DNA of 64,000 nt, from positions 124,001 through 188,000 of IMG/VR virus record IMGVR_UViG_3300018004_000004. One strand, given 5' to 3'. The notes below the pieces were generated by a model that saw only the letters and a program-made list of their open reading frames with translations, made no database searches and had not been told where the DNA came from. This document shows, piece by piece, positions 1,879-50,889 of the stretch. Position 1 is the first letter of the stretch; each line of letters begins with the position of its first letter. Both the position numbers and the translations under genes were made by a program.

Positions 1879-2625
1879 TTATCCATTGCCTACAAGTGTC
1901 AAGCAAATATCTGCAAGTGTAGTATCCGGTGTGACTGGGCCGTCTATTTCTAGTAGATCAGTAGCAAGAAAAGACGAATCTGAAGCCTGTGTAAACGTCG
2001 CTGTTGTCGCCGACATAGCAAAGTTAGCAGTAGCGAACGGAGCTCCATTCTTACTGAATGTATACGTAGTAGATGCAGTGGCAGCAGCAGACGCAGTACC
2101 TAAAGAAGCAGTAGCACCAGCGGGGAAATCTATCGGAATACCAAGCGGTCCGCGGAAGAGTTTCTGGCTAGCAGTTCCCAATCCCACAATGAATACAGCA
2201 AGAGGCTTAGCAGTTGGACTAACTGATCCAGTAGGACCTGTCGGTCCTGTTGGACCTGTGGCTCCGGTTGGCCCTGTGGCACCTGTTGGTCCAGTGCCTC
2301 CACTTGCACCACTTGCACCTGTGGCTCCTGTTGCCCCGGTAGCACCTGTGGCACCCGTAGCACCAGTGGCTCCTGTTGCTCCTGAAGCTCCAGATGCTCC
2401 TGAAGCGCCGGTTGCTCCTGTCGCCCCCGTTGCTCCAGTGGGCCCTGTATTACCTGTCGCTCCTGTGGCGCCAGTAGCCCCAGCCGGTCCTGTAGCTCCA
2501 GTAGGCCCAGCTACTGTAGGCACATATCCAGAGACGTTACCACTCATATCCGTCTGCCAAGTGATATTGATCTCGGTAGCTGGATGTGGAGGAGCTGGAG
2601 TTGTGCTATTTAACGTGATCGACAT
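1879..2625 (-). CDS. Collagen-like (G-X-T repeat) virion fibre/whisker protein
   Basis: About 30 GAT/GPT triplets plus a C-terminal globular domain paralogous to that of 28276..29232. Confidence 0.75.
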
Positions 2626-28275: not shown

Positions 28276-29232
28276 TTATCCGTTGCCGACGAGTGTTAGA
28301 CACACACCCGCTAGAGTTGAATCTGCTGTTGCTGGGCCATCCACTTCAAGGATGTCCGAAGCAAGGAAAGCGGTATCAGATGCTTGTGTCCAAGTGCCGA
28401 CCAGGCCGCCAGAAACACCAGCATCGAACACACAGGTAGCAAATGGTGAACCATTCTTATTGAAGGTGAATGTTGCTGCTGTGCCGCCTGTGCCTGTTGC
28501 CGCGACCTTAGCTACGGCATAAGAAAGCGAAGCACTGACAGGGAAATCTATCGCAATACCTAGCTTGCCATAAAAGAGAATCTGACCATTGGTTCCAACA
28601 CCAGGAGCATAAATAGCAAGAGGCTTGGCGCTAATCCCAGGAGATCCTGTCGCTCCGGTTGCGCCTGTAGGTCCTGTAGCACCCGTCGGTCCTGTCGCAC
28701 CGGTAGCTCCGGTTGCGCCTGTAGCACCTGTACCTGTTGGTCCAGTAGGTCCTGTTGGGCCTGTTGCTCCAGTTGGTCCAGTAGCTCCTGTTGGTCCTGG
28801 AGGCCCACCACTAGGTCCAGTTGCACCGGTGGGACCTGTAGCACCTGTAGGACCTGTAGCTCCTGTGGCACCTGTAGTACCCGGGCTGGTAGCTGAGCCA
28901 AACACATTGGCAGTTGTGCCGCCTGTGAATGTTGTACAGTTGAAACGATAAAGAGTGTTTTCAGCTATCGGGAAAGTTGTGCTAGGGGTTGCATGAGCAT
29001 CCCAGGAAGACACATTATTCCACGTCACACCATTATCAGGTGAGATCTGCAGTTCAAAAACCAGACCGCTAAAGGAACCAGTAGTGACAACTGTAGCTAC
29101 TAGTAAGTCAGCAGCATCTGCAACTGACGGCTTCAGGAATGGATAAGAAACGGAGAAACCTGTTCCTGTCGCACCAACCACTAGATGAGAGATATGGGTG
29201 CGAGCCAGTGCAAGAGTTGTAAGAGTCGGCAT
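28276..29232 (-). CDS. Collagen-like fibre protein (paralog of 1879..2625)
   Basis: GAT/GPT triplets; C-terminal domain KPLA...G.LGI.IDFP...[16 protein letters not shown] shared. Confidence 0.75.
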
Positions 29233-39947: not shown

Positions 39948-42860
39948 GTGATGAATCAACGTTACCACGTTGTATTCGAAGGAGAGAATAAAGTAACAAC
40001 TCGCCGTCCTTGGAAGGGACGCGGTGTTGAGCTTTATTCCTCCAGCGGTGATCCAGCAAGAGGCATACCAGCGATGTTTGGTTCTCATGAAGTGCGTCAG
40101 TTTCTTGAGAACCTCGGGCCATTCATCGTAGCATCGATGGACAATCCCGCAGTCGCAGCTCAGATCCTTGATGAAGGGTATGTGGTAACAGACCCTGATT
40201 CAGGTGCGAAGAGCAAGTGGTATGTTGGTGGTTATTTCGTCCGCGACGACGGTGCAGTGTATATCATGCTGCCCGAAGTCACAACCGATGCCCAGTTTCG
40301 TTCTAAGCTGGGTTTGCATATTGACCTAAACGATCAGTGGGGCAATAGCTTCAAGGTAGGTAAGTATCTGAAGCGCTTGTTCTCACATCATCGTAAGTTC
40401 ATGCAAGGTGAAGTCGTGAAGGAGCTCGACAATGTCGTGCTCGTACGGCTGAAGAGTGGCAAAGTGATCAGTGTGAAATATGCTGATCATGGCGCGCTCA
40501 CAGATGGCATGAACCTCGTGTCAACACATTGCATGAAGCTCATGGGTCTTAACAAGACCATGGGTGCTGGCCTTAGGATCACGGCGTTGAGTCCTAAGGG
40601 ATTCAGCAAAGGCCATGCGATTGTACTGCCGGAGCTGCAGCATGATGTCGTGCTGTTCAACTCTAAGAAGCTGCTGACAGGTGATCAGTTCACCTTCGGC
40701 ATGGATTGGTTGCATAGCGGTGCAGTATTCACTGATATGCAATCAGTCATTAACTTCAGGTTCGCAAACACCAGCTTCTTGTCGCAGTGGGACAAGGAGT
40801 TTCTGGAGACAGTAGTCGATGCTATTGAAGATGAGGATAAGCTGAAGCGTATGCTTCAGTTCTATCATGTGGAGTTCCACAAACAGCGGGACGATGACGG
40901 AGACATGCAGTTCATTCAGAAGGACAAAGAGTGGGCACTGTTGCGTGCATTGCGCGGTGGTGTGAAGATTCAAGATCACCCAGCGCTTGTGCGTAAGGTG
41001 TTCCATCTATTTGCCGACAAGGTTCGCAACTGCGAAACCAACATTCGTGTGCCTATACCTGAGACAGCAGGTGGTGCACGTTATGCTTTGGTTGATCCTA
41101 CCATCTTCGATATGTGGGGTGATCCCACTCTCGAAGGTACTCTGAAGAATGACCAGGTATATTGCGCTGGCGATGTTGGCAGCGTGGTATTCCACAGGCA
41201 GCCGAATGCGCATCGTGACGAGCATTATATCGCGCGCGCAACAAGCAATGAATATCTGAAAGCTATGGACACTGGATGTTTCATGTTCATATCCAAGGAT
41301 ATCATCAAGCCAAGCCTGGCCAAGCTAGGTGGTGGTGATCAGGATGATCGCCTTGTGTATTACAAGGACCCAGCAGTTGTGGAACACTTCAGGCAACTGG
41401 AGCTGGATCCATATCCCACAGTGCCTCTGGTTGAGAAGCCAGAGCCACCAAAGCGTTCCAATGCATTTGCACACAGACTGCATCGCACACCGATCTATGA
41501 TCGGACTCAGCTGCTGATGATGTTGGATCAGATGAAGAACCAGAGTCTGCATATTGGCTTCGTTGTTAATGCTGGTATGCATGACACTGTGCTGACGGAT
41601 AATAGGGCAGAGATCACCAGGAATCTGGAGGCTCTGCCAAAGACACTGAAGAATCAATCTGCCTATGAATGGTTCACAACCAAGTATCAGAACTATACGC
41701 TGCGTGAACCAATGTCCAGGTTGGAGTTGGTCATTGACGCGGTCAAGAAGACTGGTGCTGATCTGGCTGGTATTCGTGACCAGGTGAAGAAGTTCAATGA
41801 CACATTCGAAGTCGTGGCTGAGTTCATGACGCGCGGCGGTAGGTATGATGGGAGAATCCCATTGTCTCGCCGCGGTGACAGCCATCCAGTTATGGTCCGT
41901 ACCATTGTGGATGATAAGCTGGATGAACTCAAGCGACTGAGGCAAGACCTGGAAGATATCATCACTGATATCTCTTGGCAAATGATACCGCCAGTGGCGG
42001 AGGAAATACTGACATGCCCGTGCTATGAAGAGCAGGCGACTCAGCTGGCGTATGCCATGCGTCAGGAGTATCGCAATCAGTGGGCCAATCTGAGTAAGGA
42101 GATTGAGCGCACTGGTGACAAGGCAGAAGTAAAGAAGACCATAGATGCGTACATGAAGATCGACAAGGCGATGTATGAGCGCTTCGCTCCACATCCGCTG
42201 ATCATCGATGCCATGGTCAAGCTGTATATCATGGTGTATGAATCCAGGAAGCCAGAGGCGCCAAGGGACGAAGATGGTCGTCCTATTAAGTTTGGTGATG
42301 GTATCCTCTGGGGCCCGAGAATGTCCGGCCTGACCCTGCGCATGATGGAGCGCGCAGGGCTGGCTGGGCGGTTCACTGAGATCACATTCGAGGATGAAGT
42401 CAAACACCTCCGTAAGGAGAGCCTCGATGTGGTTATTGATCAGGGTATTGTACGCCAGGAGGGTACCAATATCTTGGTGGGTACCATTGACCCAATGGCC
42501 GATGGTGCTAAGAAGGCAGAGAAAGGATGGGTGAAGGTGGCAGCAAGGGATGCATATCCCTATGAACCAGAACCCAGGTACATGATCCTGCGAGTAGTTA
42601 ATGGCATGCATGCCAAGGGTGCGTCTCCAGTTGAGATCGCACAGTGGCGTGATCATGCTAACGAACAGGTCGAACTAGTTCCTTTCATCTGGACGAACCC
42701 GGAGAATGAAGAAGAACACGCAGTTCGCGTGGTGCTCAATGGCCAGGATTATGGCTATATCGATCGCAAGGACAACACGTATGTCACTGAAAAGACTATG
42801 GGTTGGCTATTGCCGGGCACAACACCAAAGACCATGGGAGTATTGGTCTATGAAAGGTAG
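39948..42860 (+). CDS. Putative single-subunit two-barrel RNA polymerase (YonO/cellular RdRP-like)
   Basis: 970 aa; ordered motifs LTDGMNLVS, LRI...KGFSKG, FHRQPN, LGGGDQDDR, matching the TDG..IS, R...KG, R.P and GG.D.DGD motifs of QDE-1-type RdRP/YonO. Confidence 0.7.
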   Translation: MMNQRYHVVFEGENKVTTRRPWKGRGVELYSSSGDPARGIPAMFGSHEVRQFLENLGPFIVASMDNPAVAAQILDEGYVVTDPDSGAKSKWYVGGYFVRDDGAVYIMLPEVTTDAQFRSKLGLHIDLNDQWGNSFKVGKYLKRLFSHHRKFMQGEVVKELDNVVLVRLKSGKVISVKYADHGALTDGMNLVSTHCMKLMGLNKTMGAGLRITALSPKGFSKGHAIVLPELQHDVVLFNSKKLLTGDQFTFGMDWLHSGAVFTDMQSVINFRFANTSFLSQWDKEFLETVVDAIEDEDKLKRMLQFYHVEFHKQRDDDGDMQFIQKDKEWALLRALRGGVKIQDHPALVRKVFHLFADKVRNCETNIRVPIPETAGGARYALVDPTIFDMWGDPTLEGTLKNDQVYCAGDVGSVVFHRQPNAHRDEHYIARATSNEYLKAMDTGCFMFISKDIIKPSLAKLGGGDQDDRLVYYKDPAVVEHFRQLELDPYPTVPLVEKPEPPKRSNAFAHRLHRTPIYDRTQLLMMLDQMKNQSLHIGFVVNAGMHDTVLTDNRAEITRNLEALPKTLKNQSAYEWFTTKYQNYTLREPMSRLELVIDAVKKTGADLAGIRDQVKKFNDTFEVVAEFMTRGGRYDGRIPLSRRGDSHPVMVRTIVDDKLDELKRLRQDLEDIITDISWQMIPPVAEEILTCPCYEEQATQLAYAMRQEYRNQWANLSKEIERTGDKAEVKKTIDAYMKIDKAMYERFAPHPLIIDAMVKLYIMVYESRKPEAPRDEDGRPIKFGDGILWGPRMSGLTLRMMERAGLAGRFTEITFEDEVKHLRKESLDVVIDQGIVRQEGTNILVGTIDPMADGAKKAEKGWVKVAARDAYPYEPEPRYMILRVVNGMHAKGASPVEIAQWRDHANEQVELVPFIWTNPENEEEHAVRVVLNGQDYGYIDRKDNTYVTEKTMGWLLPGTTPKTMGVLVYER

Positions 42861-42925
42861 ACCATATACATGCCCACATTCCATTGTACTCTTTTCGACG
42901 TAGTTGTTTGGATTGACCGGTATTC

Positions 42926-43037
42926 GGGGCCTATTACCTTTATGGGCCCCGATCCCATTGATTTGATGGGATTTACCATCATTTGATGGGTGTATTTAGG
43001 CCCTGTTTTATGGTGTAAAATAAGCCCATTTATGGGC
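42926..43037. repeat. Cluster of short inverted repeats with a CCCAT/ATGGG core
   Basis: Palindromes at 42926-50, 42952-72, 42976-89 and 43024-37; direct repeat ATTTGATGGG at 42961 and 42981. Confidence 0.7.
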
Positions 43038-43050
43038 ACAAGGAGAAGTC

Positions 43051-43491
43051 ATGACTCAACTCAATCGGTATGCATCACGCTCTAACTTCAACAATCAGAA
43101 GACGTTCGGTCGTCGTTGGACATCGAACTTTCGTCGGCAGTCTGGTCTGATCATTGCTGTGCTCGATCGTGGCTATTTGCCACAGAGCCACAACGATCTG
43201 CCCAAGCCGTTCTGTTCCTTCAAGGTCGAGACGGACACCGGCAAGCGCTACATCGTGCGCTTGGAAGGCCGGCAGGCCCTGGACTTCACCGGAGAAGTTG
43301 GTCAGCTCATGTACTACGAAGGCGTCTTCAAGGGGCGCTTCGTGGACAAGACTGGCAAATATCACGGTGAGTACTGGTCCGCCACGTTCGCCGAGATCGA
43401 CAACAAGGAAATCGACGAGTATGTTGCTCATCTGACAGCAGTTAAGCTGCGGATGGACAAGGAAGCGCAGGACGCCGCCGAGCAGAAGTAA
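43051..43491 (+). CDS. Putative OB-fold ssDNA-binding protein
   Basis: Beta-strand pattern FCSFKVET...YIVRLEG.QA...GQLMYYEG.F; acidic C-terminus; strong codon bias. Confidence 0.4.
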   Translation: MTQLNRYASRSNFNNQKTFGRRWTSNFRRQSGLIIAVLDRGYLPQSHNDLPKPFCSFKVETDTGKRYIVRLEGRQALDFTGEVGQLMYYEGVFKGRFVDKTGKYHGEYWSATFAEIDNKEIDEYVAHLTAVKLRMDKEAQDAAEQK

Positions 43492-43922: not shown

Positions 43923-44279
43923 ATGTGCAATAGACTGAGTGATCTGGGATTGAAGGCACTGGAAATCAATAAAGAGGAGAAGACTGTGTTGGTTACAGCA
44001 TTAAAGCTCCTCGATTGCAAAGCCAAGGCCATGCAGCATGATACTGCATCCATGCTGAATGAAGAGCGAGAACTGAACTGTGTTGTCCTCTCTCATATCT
44101 GTGATCAACTAACAGATAGAATAGAGACGCTGTTTGCTCCGCCGGCGCCTCCTGAAGTGCTCGTTGATCACCATGTGGCCATTCATGGACGCAACCCAGG
44201 ACCAGCTGACCTGGATCCTGTAGTGGATTGTGGCTGTGGGTTTTCCCATCGCCGATCGGAACGCTGCGGTCCGTGGTAA
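43923..44279 (+). CDS. Hypothetical protein
   Basis: RBS AAGGAG, 118 aa. Confidence 0.55.
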   Translation: MCNRLSDLGLKALEINKEEKTVLVTALKLLDCKAKAMQHDTASMLNEERELNCVVLSHICDQLTDRIETLFAPPAPPEVLVDHHVAIHGRNPGPADLDPVVDCGCGFSHRRSERCGPW

Positions 44280-44289
44280 TACGATATTA

Positions 44290-44449
44290 CCAGAGGAATG
44301 CCCAGATAGTATCTGGGACCGAAGTGTGAGCTAGGTATGCAAGTTCGATCCAATGCCTCTGCCTAGTCATTTCCCGCGGGTTGGGCTGCAACTCACACGC
44401 TGAAGGCCCACAACAACCTTCCTACATGGTAATGTAGGCATTCCTCTGG
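44290..44449 (+). ncRNA. Candidate multibranched structured RNA (unassigned)
   Basis: Perfect 13-bp closing helix CCAGAGGAATGCC/GGCATTCCTCTGG with internal stems CCCAGAT/ATCTGGG, GTGTGAG/CTCACAC, CTAGG/CCTAG, CCTACAT/ATGTAGG. Confidence 0.55.
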
Positions 44450-44471
44450 ACTTGTCTTAAGGAGATTGATC

Positions 44472-44729
44472 ATGTCAGTCTGTGCTTATACGTTGATTGA
44501 GCTCGAGGCCATTATTGGCAACGAGTTGACTAATCATCCCAACTTCTGTGACTCCAGGAACTATTGGGCCTGGGAAGAATATGTAGCTATCCCTGCTCTG
44601 CGGGGATTTGGCTACAAGATACTCGACAACCACTTCCGTACATTGGAAGGGGATAGCTGTGGTCCTTTGACCCGCGGTATTCGAGTGCAGAGTTCAACCG
44701 GCCTTGTTCGCATGGCCTGGTATGGGTAA
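44472..44729 (+). CDS. Hypothetical protein
   Basis: RBS TAAGGAG; GD..GP..R.I motif. Confidence 0.55.
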   Translation: MSVCAYTLIELEAIIGNELTNHPNFCDSRNYWAWEEYVAIPALRGFGYKILDNHFRTLEGDSCGPLTRGIRVQSSTGLVRMAWYG

Positions 44730-49124: not shown

Positions 49125-49261
49125 CACTCGAACAGTTCGAGGGGATCCTTGCTTTGTTCTTTGTCCTGTATTTGCTCTTGCGCGCCAGGCGCAAAGAGTT
49201 AGGACTCAAGGATCACCTAGATCCAATGCCATGGATTAGGAAGCACATCTTCCCGGAGTGA
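49121..49261 (+). CDS. Small membrane peptide (46 aa)
   Basis: GTGA overlap; MTLEQFEGILALFFVLYLLLRARRK... Confidence 0.45.
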   Translation: MTLEQFEGILALFFVLYLLLRARRKELGLKDHLDPMPWIRKHIFPE

Positions 49262-49275
49262 GAAAGGAGGTCATC

Positions 49276-50889
49276 ATGGACAAGAAGGAAATGGCTGATG
49301 AACTGATCTATGCTATATTCCAAACCCTAAAGAATCATGCGATTAACTTCTTGCTTGATGGCCTTGTTCTCAAACCGTTATCCAAATCGATTGCTGCTAA
49401 GATGCAGCCCAGCCCGTATAAGGGAGCGAGCGCATTGTTATCTGCTCGCATGATGTCCAAGAAGACTGTTGATGGTGCCATCCTTGAGGGCCCAACAGAG
49501 GCAGGCTATGCCAAGTATGCTATTCGCAAGGGCATGCCAGGCCCAGGACAGAAGAGATTGGCAATCGAGAATGAACCGCACACCGTTGATGATTTTGATG
49601 GTGTGATTGAGGAAGGCTATGGCAAAGGCAAGAAAGAACTCATCTACACAGGCCAAGCCGCCATCAAAGTTGGAGAAGAAAGATTCCTCGGCAAAGTCAA
49701 CATTCATAAGCACACTGCTGACAAAGCCGGGCTCCACTGGGATTTTGTTGCGGAAGGCGTTAAGCCTGGGACACAGCAGTTCGAAGTTAACATCCCTACT
49801 GGCCGATGCAAAGGACGCTATGCCTTTGTTACCACGGCCAAAGGCATGCTCATTACCCGCCTCAAGGACAGGAGCGTCCTCATCGAGAAGCCGACATTCC
49901 ATCTCAAAGGCGAAGACCTTCTGAGAGAGCTCGACAAGAATCCCAGTGGCACAATAGCAGAGTGGAAACCAGATGGTTCACTCGCGAATGTGGCCATTAG
50001 TGGGCAACGGGCTATCTTTAGAAGTCATCGGGATACAGGCGAACCTTACTACGATAAACTGCCAGGACTAGAAGATCTGAGCAACCGTAGTGGATTCCTA
50101 TCCAATCGCCTGTTCTTCCCGGGACCCAACCTGGATGGAACGGTGTTACGAGGGGAACTGTTCCATCCAGAAGGGGCTGCTCGAGTTGGTGGTATTCTGA
50201 ATAGCATGCCGGACAAGGCTATTCAGTTCCAGACAGAGCATGGCCCAGTGACATTCATTGTATGGGACGAGCTGAAGCACAATGGCAGAGATATATCCAA
50301 GCTGCCTTACGCAGAGAGGAGAGCGATCTATGTCGCGGACGTCAATAGCATTCGACACTTCAACGGGCTTTGGTCGTACGTGCCAGCTCGTACCCGAGCT
50401 TTCCTTTCGTTTTACAGGGATATCGTCAACGATCCTCGTGGCCTGCCCTACGCCGAAGGTATTGTCCTCAAGGATGGAAGTAGCCCAGCTGGTGAACCAT
50501 GGCGCAAGGTCAAGTTCCGCGACACCGTGGATGTCAAGATTGTTGATGTTCTTGAGGGAACTGGTAAGTACGAAGGATCGGCCGGCAAGCTTCTGGTTCA
50601 GACAGCAGGAGGAGGACGCGGAGAAGTTGGTTCTTTCGCCATGCCTGATTGGCAGCGAAAGCAGATCCTGATTGATAAGGATCTGGTCAAGGGGCAGGTG
50701 ATTGAGATCTATGCCCAAGAGATAACCAAGGCTGGTGCTCCGCGCGCTGGTGTCATGCTGCGATTCCATCCAAGCAAGAGCGAGTATGCATTCGATCTCG
50801 AATCGAAAGCTATTGCTGATGTGGATGGCAGGACACCAAATGAAGTGAAGTATGCAATGAAGACAGCCGCAGGCTGGAGGAAGAAATGA
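49276..50889 (+). CDS. lig: ATP-dependent DNA ligase with N-terminal rearranged LigD-type phosphoesterase domain
   Basis: Motif I EWKPDG, III LRGELF, IIIa FIVWD, IV EGIVLK, V WRKVK, then OB domain; upstream PE motifs KRLAIENEPH...FDG.I..GYG.G and KH...GLHWDF. Confidence 0.85.
   Translation: MDKKEMADELIYAIFQTLKNHAINFLLDGLVLKPLSKSIAAKMQPSPYKGASALLSARMMSKKTVDGAILEGPTEAGYAKYAIRKGMPGPGQKRLAIENEPHTVDDFDGVIEEGYGKGKKELIYTGQAAIKVGEERFLGKVNIHKHTADKAGLHWDFVAEGVKPGTQQFEVNIPTGRCKGRYAFVTTAKGMLITRLKDRSVLIEKPTFHLKGEDLLRELDKNPSGTIAEWKPDGSLANVAISGQRAIFRSHRDTGEPYYDKLPGLEDLSNRSGFLSNRLFFPGPNLDGTVLRGELFHPEGAARVGGILNSMPDKAIQFQTEHGPVTFIVWDELKHNGRDISKLPYAERRAIYVADVNSIRHFNGLWSYVPARTRAFLSFYRDIVNDPRGLPYAEGIVLKDGSSPAGEPWRKVKFRDTVDVKIVDVLEGTGKYEGSAGKLLVQTAGGGRGEVGSFAMPDWQRKQILIDKDLVKGQVIEIYAQEITKAGAPRAGVMLRFHPSKSEYAFDLESKAIADVDGRTPNEVKYAMKTAAGWRKK

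What the first reader, a model, noticed from the sequence alone, without database searches (positions are those of the whole stretch)
44290..44449. 160-nt intergenic multibranched RNA-like structure of no family I recognise
Seen: a perfect 13-bp closing helix (44290-302 with 44437-449) enclosing CCCAGAT/ATCTGGG, GTGTGAG (44324-30)/CTCACAC (44392-98), nested CTAGG/CCTAG around a GTTCGATCC T-loop-like segment, a possible pseudoknot TGGGC (44382-86)/GCCCA (44406-10), and CCTACAT-GGTA-ATGTAGG. It fills an ORF-free gap exactly, between a stop codon and the next RBS. Inference: a phage ncRNA, ribozyme or cis-regulator.
Basis: partly seen in the sequence, partly recalled or inferred. Interest (0 to 1): 0.65.

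Follow-up and report, generated by a model that had tools for sequence, protein, structure and literature searches.

The report
New structured RNA in jumbo phage
The 160-base gap holds a real folded RNA gene with seven helices, one a pseudoknot, kept intact by compensating mutations in a small group of giant peat-soil phages; it matches no known RNA family and its job is unknown.

Summary
The window comes from a 215-kb uncultured jumbo phage found in peat and wetland samples.

- **Conservation:** The element is single-copy and non-coding. It is present full-length, at 73-83% identity, in every close relative recovered from metagenomes.
- **Covariation:** An alignment of nine distinct sequences supports seven helices. 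Of the pair cells, 99.8% are canonical, and 12 pairs show compensatory double changes against 0-1 in register-shifted controls. G·U pairs put the RNA on the + strand.
- **Architecture:** An 11-bp terminal helix (13 bp only in this lineage) closes a four-way junction of two hairpins and a P3/P6 pseudoknot domain. Junction and loop bases are invariant, and there is one hypervariable linker.
- **The "T-loop":** It is not conserved as a T-loop.
- **Known families:** Rfam (4227 families), ARAGORN and the YrlA model find nothing. The genome has no Ro protein and no reverse transcriptase.
- **Context:** Flanking genes differ between lineages, which argues against a gene-specific riboswitch. No promoter or terminator adjoins the element, so it is probably co-transcribed.
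- **Limits:** Phages whose neighbouring polymerase is only 61-65% identical lack it nearby. Expression is untested.

My best guess is an autonomous, processed, protein-binding RNA. Cis-acting antitermination or processing, or self-cleavage, remain open.

The parts
44290..44300 (+). P1 5' strand (CCAGAGGAAUG). This is the conserved 11-bp terminal helix with 44439-44449. In this lineage only, it can extend to 13 bp.
   Evidence: 11 pairs, 100% paired. G-C to A-U compensation at column 10/167 in 4 of 9 rows.
44301..44317 (+). P2 hairpin: 7 bp (44301-07 with 44311-17) and an invariant AGU triloop. It abuts P1 with no linker.
   Evidence: 5 of 7 pairs changed on both sides (for example CCCAGAU/AUCUGGG against GUCGAAU/AUUCGAC). 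G·U at the base in 4 rows.
44318..44323 (+). J2/3 junction ACCGAA. CCGAA is invariant.
   Evidence: invariant columns.
44324..44330 (+). P3 5' strand GUGUGAG. It pairs with 44392-44398, which lies inside the P6 loop, so the two helices form a pseudoknot.
   Evidence: 100% paired, 5 invariant pairs, one G-C to A-U change in 4 rows. One pair is lost to a 1-nt deletion in the same rows.
44331..44366 (+). P4/P4a arm. P4 is 7 bp (44331-37 with 44360-66). P4a is 3 bp (44339-41 with 44354-56) and closes a 12-nt loop at 44342-53 containing invariant GAUCCAA.
   Evidence: P4 is 98% paired with one-sided G·U changes. P4a shows GCA/UGC to ACA/UGU compensation in L019. The loop is invariant from GAUCC onward.
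44367..44381 (+). Hypervariable pyrimidine-rich linker (10-25 nt in relatives), ending in the conserved GCGGG.
   Evidence: length and sequence vary between all lineages.
44382..44410 (+). P6 (UGGGCU 44382-87 with GGCCCA 44405-10). Its loop carries the P3 3' strand CUCACAC (44392-98) and the conserved CUG of the CUGAWG stretch.
   Evidence: 6 pairs, 100% paired. G-C to A-U compensation in 4 rows and an invariant U·G closing pair.
44411..44420 (+). J6/5 junction, C/A-rich, starting with conserved CAC.
44421..44438 (+). P5 hairpin: 7 bp (44421-27 with 44432-38) and a KGUA loop. It abuts the P1 3' strand with no linker.
   Evidence: 3 pairs changed on both sides (CCUACAU/AUGUAGG against CCUGCUU/AAGCAGG).
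44439..44449 (+). P1 3' strand (CAUUCCUCUGG).
43923..44279 (+). Upstream ORF (118 aa, no known family). Its stop codon lies 10 nt before the element. It is a context gene, not shown to be functionally linked.
   Evidence: In three lineages the homolog lies downstream of the element instead.
44472..44729 (+). Downstream ORF (85 aa, no known family), with RBS AAGGAG at 44460-65. It is a context gene.

Best explanation
The element is a genuine, selectively maintained RNA on the + strand. It forms a four-way junction: P1, P2, P5 and a P3-P4-P6 pseudoknot domain. It behaves as an autonomous gene-like module in the block of small + strand genes of one clade of peat and wetland jumbo phages.

The following steps are inferred, not shown. 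The element has no promoter or terminator of its own and sits 4-10 nt after a stop codon and 10-25 nt before the next RBS. It is therefore most likely transcribed as part of the polycistronic message. Host RNases would then cut it out at the A/U-rich single-stranded flanks, much as phage tRNAs are released. The 11-bp terminal helix, stacked on P2 and P5, seals both ends and would make the roughly 160-nt product stable. It would then act through its fold, with invariant junction and loop bases as a binding surface for a phage or host protein (an RNP or a decoy). It would not regulate a particular neighbouring gene.
For: **Shown**
- All pairings are present.
- The element is full-length at 73-83% identity in every close relative.
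- Pair cells are 99.8% canonical, with 12 compensatory pairs against 0-1 in slid controls and 0 of 500 shuffles.
- 23 G·U cells make the + strand 99.8% paired against 94.2% for the - strand.
- Stops and non-triplet indels interrupt all frames.
- It is single-copy in the genome.
- Flanking gene families differ between lineages while the element stays whole. Its order relative to the 118-aa gene is even inverted in three lineages.
- No sigma-70-like promoter or intrinsic terminator lies beside it.
- The unpaired bases CCGAA, GAUCCAAUG, GCGGG, CUG and CAC are invariant.

**Inferred**
- Release by processing, stability, and protein binding.
Against: - There is no transcript evidence. The only RNA library holding part of this stretch has contigs at 43035-43271 but none on the element.
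- No partner protein was identified. All neighbours are family-less.
- Distribution is narrow. No match was found within 10 kb of the polymerase homolog in a 61% relative, or within 2.9 kb in a 65% relative.
- An element embedded in an operon fits a cis-acting role equally well.
Confidence: 0.4

Rival explanations
1. It is a cis-acting co-transcriptional element. The nascent RNA would act on the polymerase that made it (processive antitermination, as with Bacillus EAR or HK022 put). Alternatively it would serve as a processing or stability site (RNase III/E) that separates and protects the flanking cistrons.
For: - It is embedded between cistrons without its own promoter or terminator.
- Its function would be independent of the identity of the neighbours.
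- It lies about 1.3 kb downstream of a conserved promoter-like block at 42990-43030 and near the start of a very long + strand gene block.
- P1 stacked on P2 or P5 gives about 18 bp of continuous helix.
Against: - No strong intrinsic terminators were found downstream that would need suppressing.
- Seven helices, a pseudoknot and many invariant unpaired bases are far more than a nuclease site needs.
- There is no similarity to EAR or any other Rfam model, even at E<=10.
- Relatives at 61-65% polymerase identity do without it at this place.
Confidence: 0.25
2. It is a self-cleaving, or otherwise catalytic, ribozyme of a new class that cuts the polycistronic transcript.
For: - The setting is typical of known self-cleaving ribozymes in phages, which show no consistent gene association (established knowledge).
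- It has a compact pseudoknotted core with invariant junction bases.
- A closing helix brings the ends together.
Against: - No match to hammerhead, twister, twister-sister, pistol, hatchet, HDV, glmS or any other Rfam model.
- The CUGAWG stretch varies at the hammerhead-invariant A6 (CUGUUG in four rows), and the strand order does not fit hammerhead or HDV (inference).
- It occurs in one narrow clade and as a single copy, unlike most ribozyme classes.
- No cleavage data exist.
Confidence: 0.12
3. It is a ligand-sensing riboswitch or aptamer.
For: - It has a complex junction with invariant unpaired bases and a pseudoknot.
- It lies 10-25 nt upstream of an RBS.
Against: - The downstream gene differs between lineages.
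- P1 is 11-13 bp, too stable for a typical switching helix.
- No conserved alternative pairing or terminator was found. A candidate linker/P1 alternative was no better than shuffles in most lineages.
- The RBS is not sequestered.
- There is no Rfam match.
Confidence: 0.07
4. It acts at the DNA level, as a replication origin, a recombination or packaging site, a MITE-like mobile element, or a hairpin promoter.
For: - It has terminal inverted repeats.
- Its position relative to the 118-aa gene changes between lineages.
- P2 is a 7-bp stem with an invariant 3-nt loop.
Against: - It is single-copy, and no target-site duplication is visible in the flanks.
- There is no GC-skew inflection at the element, and no iterons.
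- Seven separately covarying helices, with strand-specific G·U pairs including two invariant ones, indicate a single-stranded + strand molecule.
Confidence: 0.05
5. It is a tRNA-like or Y-RNA-like (YrlA) molecule.
For: - It has a long terminal helix and a GUUCGAUCC segment.
- ACCGAAGUGUGAG resembles the 5' stem of vertebrate Y RNAs (from memory, not tested against a sequence).
- The phage carries about 30 tRNAs and a tmRNA.
Against: - ARAGORN finds nothing here.
- The YrlA model hits only the tRNA regions of the genome, not this element.
- There is no TROVE/Ro gene in the genome.
- UUCGA is not conserved.
- Covariation supports P6 rather than a Ro-type bulged helix.
Confidence: 0.03

Closest known systems
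EAR (eps-associated RNA) of Bacillales and the put RNAs of phage HK022, both cis-acting processive antiterminator RNAs
   Same: They are intercistronic or leader elements inside an operon, without a promoter or terminator of their own. They are structured (EAR has a pseudoknot). Their action does not depend on which genes flank them. put is phage-encoded.
   Different: No sequence or covariance-model similarity. EAR is tied to eps operons of Bacillales, and put is two simple stem-loops of about 70 nt. The element here has seven helices and a terminal helix that joins its 5' and 3' ends. Antitermination was not tested.
phi29 packaging RNA (pRNA)
   Same: It is a phage-encoded RNA of about 120-174 nt. 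A helix joins its 5' and 3' ends, it has a multi-helix junction, and its loop sequences are conserved for intermolecular contacts. It works as a protein-bound RNA scaffold.
   Different: No Rfam match. pRNA has its own promoter near a genome end and occurs only in small phi29-like podophages. This phage has an ordinary large terminase and portal. No complementary loop pair was found here, only a palindromic GAUC in the P4a loop.
Group I intron catalytic core (P3/P7 pseudoknot)
   Same: The strand order is the same: closing helix, P2 hairpin, P3 5' strand, a hairpin domain, P7-like 5' strand, P3 3' strand, P7-like 3' strand, 3' hairpin. This is read directly from the supported structure.
   Different: It is only 160 nt, with no P6 or P8 equivalents. 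The group I model does not match even at E<=10. It lies between complete genes that have their own stop codon, RBS and start codon, and those genes differ between lineages. So it is not an intron.
Bacterial Y RNAs (YrlA) and tRNA-like stable RNAs
   Same: They have a long terminal helix that seals both ends and a compact structured body. They occur in phages with large tRNA sets and are released by processing rather than transcribed from their own promoter.
   Different: The YrlA model and ARAGORN are both negative, and there is no Ro gene. The T-loop-like bases are not conserved.
Orphan candidate structured RNAs catalogued from IMG/VR (PMC10690425)
   Same: They are intergenic phage motifs defined by covariation alone, with no assigned function.
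   Different: That catalogue's motifs average 67 nt and reach at most 151 nt. This element is 160 nt with a pseudoknot. The two IMG/VR copies I found are identical, so it could hardly have been called there. Whether it is listed could not be checked, because the supplements are not held.

Membership tests
Any Rfam 15 family (4227 models, including riboswitches, self-cleaving ribozymes, group I/II introns, 6S, pRNA, EAR, GOLLD/ROOL/HEARO) | Covariance-model score at or above the family's gathering score | tested here: not met
   No match at gathering over the 64-kb window. At E<=10 on 44150-44600 there were only two chance hits to eukaryotic models, 16 bits against gathering scores of 34 and 80. 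No match at E<=10 in five loci representing four relative lineages.
tRNA / tmRNA | Cloverleaf detected by ARAGORN | tested here: not met
   ARAGORN finds none in the window. It does find about 30 tRNAs and a tmRNA elsewhere in the genome.
tRNA-like (T-arm) | Conserved T-loop (U54..A58-type UUCRA) closed by a 5-bp stem | tested here: not met
   Relatives have AUCGA or CCUGA there. The closing stem is 3 bp with a 12-nt loop.
Y RNA / YrlA | Match to the YrlA model | tested here: not met
   The best hits in the genome are in tRNA regions, at most 22 bits against a gathering score of 69. None falls at the element.
Y RNA / YrlA | Co-occurring Ro/Rsr (TROVE) protein | tested here: not met
   PF05731 has no match in the 215-kb genome at E<=1, and the control genomes did match. 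The host genome is unknown.
Retron / DRT non-coding RNA | Adjacent reverse transcriptase | tested here: not met
   PF00078 has no match in the genome at E<=1.
Riboswitch | Consistent association with one downstream gene family or pathway | tested here: not met
   At least four different downstream gene families occur across the nine loci examined.
Riboswitch | Expression platform: a mutually exclusive terminator or an RBS-sequestering helix | tested here: not met
   There is no terminator and the RBS lies outside all helices. The candidate alternative pairing was not better than shuffles.
Riboswitch | Ligand binding | not testable with these tools
   Needs in-line probing or ITC.
Self-cleaving ribozyme | Site-specific self-scission | not testable with these tools
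   Needs an in vitro transcription and cleavage assay. No known class matches by model.
Group I intron | Interrupts a gene whose exons join to a continuous product | tested here: not met
   The flanking ORFs are complete, with their own stop codon, RBS and start codon, and they differ between lineages.
MITE / small transposable element | Multiple copies and target-site duplications | tested here: not met
   It is single-copy by BLAST and by covariance model. The flanks show no duplication.
Intrinsic terminator | GC-rich hairpin directly followed by a U tract | tested here: not met
   The scan finds none at 44290-44470.
Processive antiterminator RNA (EAR / put type) | Promotes read-through of downstream terminators in cis | not testable with these tools
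   Only the context fits. There is no model match and no clear downstream terminators.
Conserved structured RNA (generic) | Compensatory base changes across homologs beyond controls | tested here: met
   12 pairs have changes on both sides against 0-1 in slid controls. 0 of 500 shuffles reach this, and 99.8% of cells are paired.

The most novel reading that the evidence does not exclude
The element is the founding member of a new functional RNA class. The most interesting version is a new self-cleaving or otherwise catalytic fold whose P3/P6 pseudoknot has group-I-like strand topology. An alternative is an RNA subunit or decoy that works with the QDE-1-like two-barrel polymerase encoded 1.4 kb upstream. 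The evidence establishes a complex, selected fold with invariant unpaired bases and no known relatives. It excludes neither reading.
Probability: 0.15. Interest if true: 0.8.

Novelty: new member of a known kind. Interest (0 to 1): 0.5.

Why it matters
Complex RNA folds with pseudoknots and invariant junction bases are much rarer than simple hairpin motifs. In the past they have usually turned out to be ribozymes, riboswitches or RNP scaffolds.

This one is defined cleanly: its boundaries, its strand, seven helices and its invariant bases. It sits in an unstudied lineage of jumbo phages that are widespread in peat, whose neighbouring genes have no known function.

The structure model gives direct handles for experiment, namely a 160-nt construct and compensatory mutants. 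It also gives a covariance model for mining peat metagenomes and metatranscriptomes.

If the RNA proves catalytic or polymerase-associated, that would be a new class. If it is a processing or stability element, it still shows how these phages organise very long polycistronic units.

Tried and rejected
- **Rfam.** No match at gathering or at relaxed thresholds, on the window and on relatives.
- **tRNA, YrlA, Ro and reverse transcriptase.** ARAGORN, the YrlA model, a TROVE search and an RVT_1 search were all negative for the element.
- **Cultured-phage DNA.** No match to cultured phages.
- **IMG/VR.** Scans with both flanking proteins and two DNA patterns found only an identical contig.
- **Metagenome pattern scan.** It gave one new lineage (L026), copies of sequences already in hand (L023, L024) and two chance hits: L022 and a TARA scaffold.
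- **GTDB genome pattern scan.** All eight hits are chance and none matches the model. About 30 chance hits were expected for that pattern (my estimate).
- **More distant relatives.** The model finds nothing in the sequence held around the polymerase homolog. That is ±10 kb in the 61% relative, with filters off downstream, and the upstream 10 kb plus 2.9 kb downstream (to the contig end) in the 65% relative. Two other contigs end too early to tell: the 51% relative (L033) and an 87% relative (L043).
- **Folding energy.** It is not exceptional against the genome's own windows. The 13-bp repeat is not unique.
- **Linker as an alternative partner of the P1 5' strand (a switch).** Not better than shuffles in most lineages.
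- **A further helix between GGG(U) and J6/5.** Not conserved on inspection.
- **Hammerhead or HDV reading of CUGAWG and CCGAA.** Strand order and variation do not fit.
- **Replication origin.** No skew inflection at the element.
- **Second copy of GATCCAATGCC at 49220.** It is the same sense and isolated, with no counterpart in the relative loci fetched, which do not reach that region. It is probably chance.
- **Expression.** The one RNA run lays contigs beside the element but not on it, so there is no verdict.
- **Catalogue of phage structured RNAs.** Its supplement is not held, so prior listing could not be checked.

The costly protein word search was used twice. The family scans had left the flanking proteins open, and relatives were needed for the covariation test.

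Full report
**What the window is.** The window is bases 124001-188000 of a 215,395-bp IMG/VR virus record rated complete. The record is 50.7% G+C and carries about 30 tRNA genes and a tmRNA. The window's - strand holds a structural module with large terminase, portal, major head and decoration proteins. From about 38.3 kb onward, a long block of mostly small, family-less ORFs runs on the + strand. Near-identical DNA is held by 19 runs labelled peat, wetland or soil metagenomes. The terminase is only 25-30% identical to those of Moorella phage MTATph1, Acinetobacter phage ME3 and Bacillus phage 0305phi8-36. This is an uncultured, deeply divergent jumbo phage.

**Checking the observation.** The gap runs from the TAA at 44277-79 to AAGGAG at 44460-65 and the ATG at 44472.

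On a single sequence the case is only moderate:
- The MFE is -63.9 kcal/mol, z = -4.0 against dinucleotide shuffles. The - strand gives -61.9 and z = -3.2.
- Among all 160-nt windows of the genome the element is only 2.4 sd below the GC-corrected mean, about the 43rd distinct place. Over half of the better-folding places lie in the same G-rich + strand region.
- Perfect 13-bp inverted repeats within 300 nt occur five times in the genome. Two other long-range ones fall inside called ORFs, one of them only weakly scored.

**Homologs.** IMG/VR holds only an identical second contig, and cultured phages hold nothing. The upstream 118-aa ORF has relatives at 54-79% identity over the aligned part in metagenome assemblies. 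I fetched their contigs. Together with one locus found by a DNA pattern scan (L026), they carry the element full-length at 73-83% identity. Exceptions are two contigs that hold only the part before their end and one interrupted by a run of N. Nine distinct sequences representing about six lineages were aligned (A2).

**Structure and covariation.** RNAalifold recovers P1, P2, P4/P4a, P6 and P5.
- 47 pairs in 7 helices, with 99.8% of 417 cells canonical.
- 12 pairs changed on both sides, against 0-1 when the 3' partners are slid by 1-3 columns.
- Covariation score 0.21 against 0.04-0.06, and no shuffle of 500 reaches the observed values.

P2 alone has five compensating pairs and P5 has three. 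P1, P3, P4a and P6 have one each. P4 shows only one-sided G·U changes.

P3 and P6 each rest on one lineage-level event, so the pseudoknot is well supported as pairing (100% of cells) but thinly as covariation.

There are 23 G·U cells, including the invariant U·G in P6. These make the + strand 99.8% paired against 94.2% for the complement. No reading frame survives across lineages.

The conserved architecture in window coordinates is listed under 'parts'.
- The conserved terminal helix is 11 bp.
- The 'T-loop' UUCGA varies, while GAUCCAAUG is invariant.

The nested part of the conserved structure scores -54.0 kcal/mol, against an MFE of -63.9. The MFE contains a helix that relatives cannot form.

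**Context.** In every lineage the element begins 4-10 nt after a stop codon and ends 10-25 nt before an RBS. The genes on either side differ: at least three upstream and four downstream families. In three lineages the 118-aa gene lies after the element rather than before it. There is no sigma-70-like promoter or intrinsic terminator beside it. The phage's own repeated motif TATACTAATCAG, probably a promoter, is also absent there.

The element is single-copy. My model R1 finds nothing in three places:
- within 10 kb either side of the polymerase homolog in a 61% relative, with filters off downstream;
- in the upstream 10 kb and the 2.9 kb of contig left downstream in a 65% relative;
- in eight GTDB genomes that matched a degenerate pattern by chance.

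The family is therefore confined, as far as I can see, to one clade.

**Expression.** One wetland metatranscriptome holds a small share of the 2.5-kb stretch. Its contigs lie at 43035-43271, with two doubtful pieces elsewhere and none on the element. Contigs cannot show ends or strand, and DNA carry-over is possible. Transcription is untested.

**What it is not.**
- It is not in Rfam 15 at any threshold, here or in relatives.
- It is not a tRNA.
- It is not YrlA-like, and there is no Ro gene.
- It is not a retron or DRT RNA, because the genome has no reverse transcriptase.
- It is not a MITE: it is single-copy with no duplication of flanks.
- It is not a terminator.
- It is not an intron, because the flanking genes are complete and vary.
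- It is not at a skew inflection.

**How it most likely works.** Three things are shown: a selected + strand fold, autonomy from its neighbours, and no transcription signals of its own. From these I infer that it is made as part of the polycistronic transcript.

My preferred reading (about 0.35-0.4) is this. RNases cut at the A/U-rich flanks. The 11-bp end-to-end helix, stacked on P2 and P5, stabilises the product. The RNA then acts through its invariant junction and loop bases as a protein-binding scaffold or decoy.

The rivals are:
- A cis-acting role on the transcribing polymerase or on message processing, as with EAR or put, fits the setting almost as well (0.25).
- A new self-cleaving ribozyme (0.12) and a ligand sensor (0.07) are not excluded.
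- DNA-level roles (0.05) and tRNA- or Y-like roles (0.03) are unlikely.

That the element is a real, conserved structured RNA I hold at about 0.9.

**Comparison with known systems.** In setting it is closest to intercistronic antiterminator RNAs. In overall shape it is closest to end-sealed stable RNAs such as pRNA and Y RNA. The strand order of its pseudoknot matches the P3/P7 core of group I introns. It fails the membership tests of all of these.

A catalogue of 8,495 phage candidate RNAs from IMG/VR exists (PMC10690425). Its motifs are at most 151 nt, and the two IMG/VR copies I found are identical, so prior listing is unlikely. I could not check this.

**Verdict.** This is a new RNA family within the broad, well-populated kind of orphan structured phage RNAs. 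Its complexity is notable, its distribution is narrow and its function is open. Interest is 0.5.

Noticed in passing
window 39948-42860 (+): The 970-aa ORF 1.4 kb upstream is a single-chain two-barrel polymerase of the QDE-1/RDR2/YonO kind.
- 4 of 19 homologs hit Pfam RdRP PF05183, best E 1.5e-10.
- The family keeps HRQPNAHRGE and GGGDxDDR motifs.
- The AlphaFold model (pLDDT 84.6) matches Neurospora QDE-1 and plant RDR2 over about 930-950 columns at E about 1e-16. It matches phage P32 gp64, P74 gp62 and the crAss phi14:2 polymerase more weakly.
- 54 homologs occur in metagenomes and none in cultured phages.
   Followed up: yes
window 1222, 16755, 32286, 38128 (- strand) and 55377 (+ strand); further copies elsewhere in G000: The motif (C/T)TATACTAATCAG occurs about 12 times in the genome, mostly shortly upstream of genes, including the start of the structural-gene block. 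It is probably a phage-specific promoter, perhaps for the two-barrel polymerase. None lies near the RNA element.
   Followed up: partly
window 42861-43050: The 190-nt gap after the polymerase gene holds a GC-rich hairpin (GGGGCC...GGCCCC) with compensating changes in relatives. A strongly conserved block with repeated ATGGTGT and a TAAAAT follows just before the next gene. Parts of the block recur even in the 61% relative L031. It looks like a terminator followed by a promoter or operator region. The only clean metatranscriptome contig on this stretch begins at 43035.
   Followed up: partly
window 38000-62000, + strand: Over half of the best-folding 160-nt windows of the whole genome lie in this 24-kb region, many inside ORFs. 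The + strand here has G>C skew of 0.06-0.15, which favours G·U pairing. This is a warning against using folding z-scores alone in this genome.
   Followed up: partly
window 2200-2520 and 28627-28740 (- strand ORFs 1879-2625 and 28276-29232): Long runs with a 9-nt period encode Gly-X-Y-type (collagen-like) repeats on the - strand in two structural-region ORFs. These are probably fibre proteins.
   Followed up: no
window 49258-50889 (+): This 543-aa ORF combines ATP-dependent DNA ligase domains with an N-terminal LigD-type 3'-phosphoesterase-like stretch.
   Followed up: no
window 49220-49230: GATCCAATGCC, the invariant loop sequence of the element plus two bases, recurs once in the same sense in the intergenic gap upstream of the ligase gene. 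About 0.1 such matches are expected by chance. There is no surrounding similarity.
   Followed up: partly
G000 63.6-73.5 kb and 189-210 kb (outside the window): The phage carries about 30 tRNA genes and a tmRNA with tag AEFEELPLAA, interspersed with small ORFs.
   Followed up: no
L031 13463-13727 and L042 13495-13735: Relatives that lack the element have G-rich, hairpin-rich gene-free gaps of 240-270 nt at about the same place downstream of the polymerase gene. These may be unrelated structured RNAs in an equivalent position.
   Followed up: no
window 43923-44279 and relatives (alignment A5): The 118-aa neighbour has a conserved N-terminal domain of about 75 residues. Its C-terminal tail differs wholesale between lineages, as if by frameshifts. 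In some lineages the tail is Cys/His-rich (DCGCGFSH...RCGPW).
   Followed up: no
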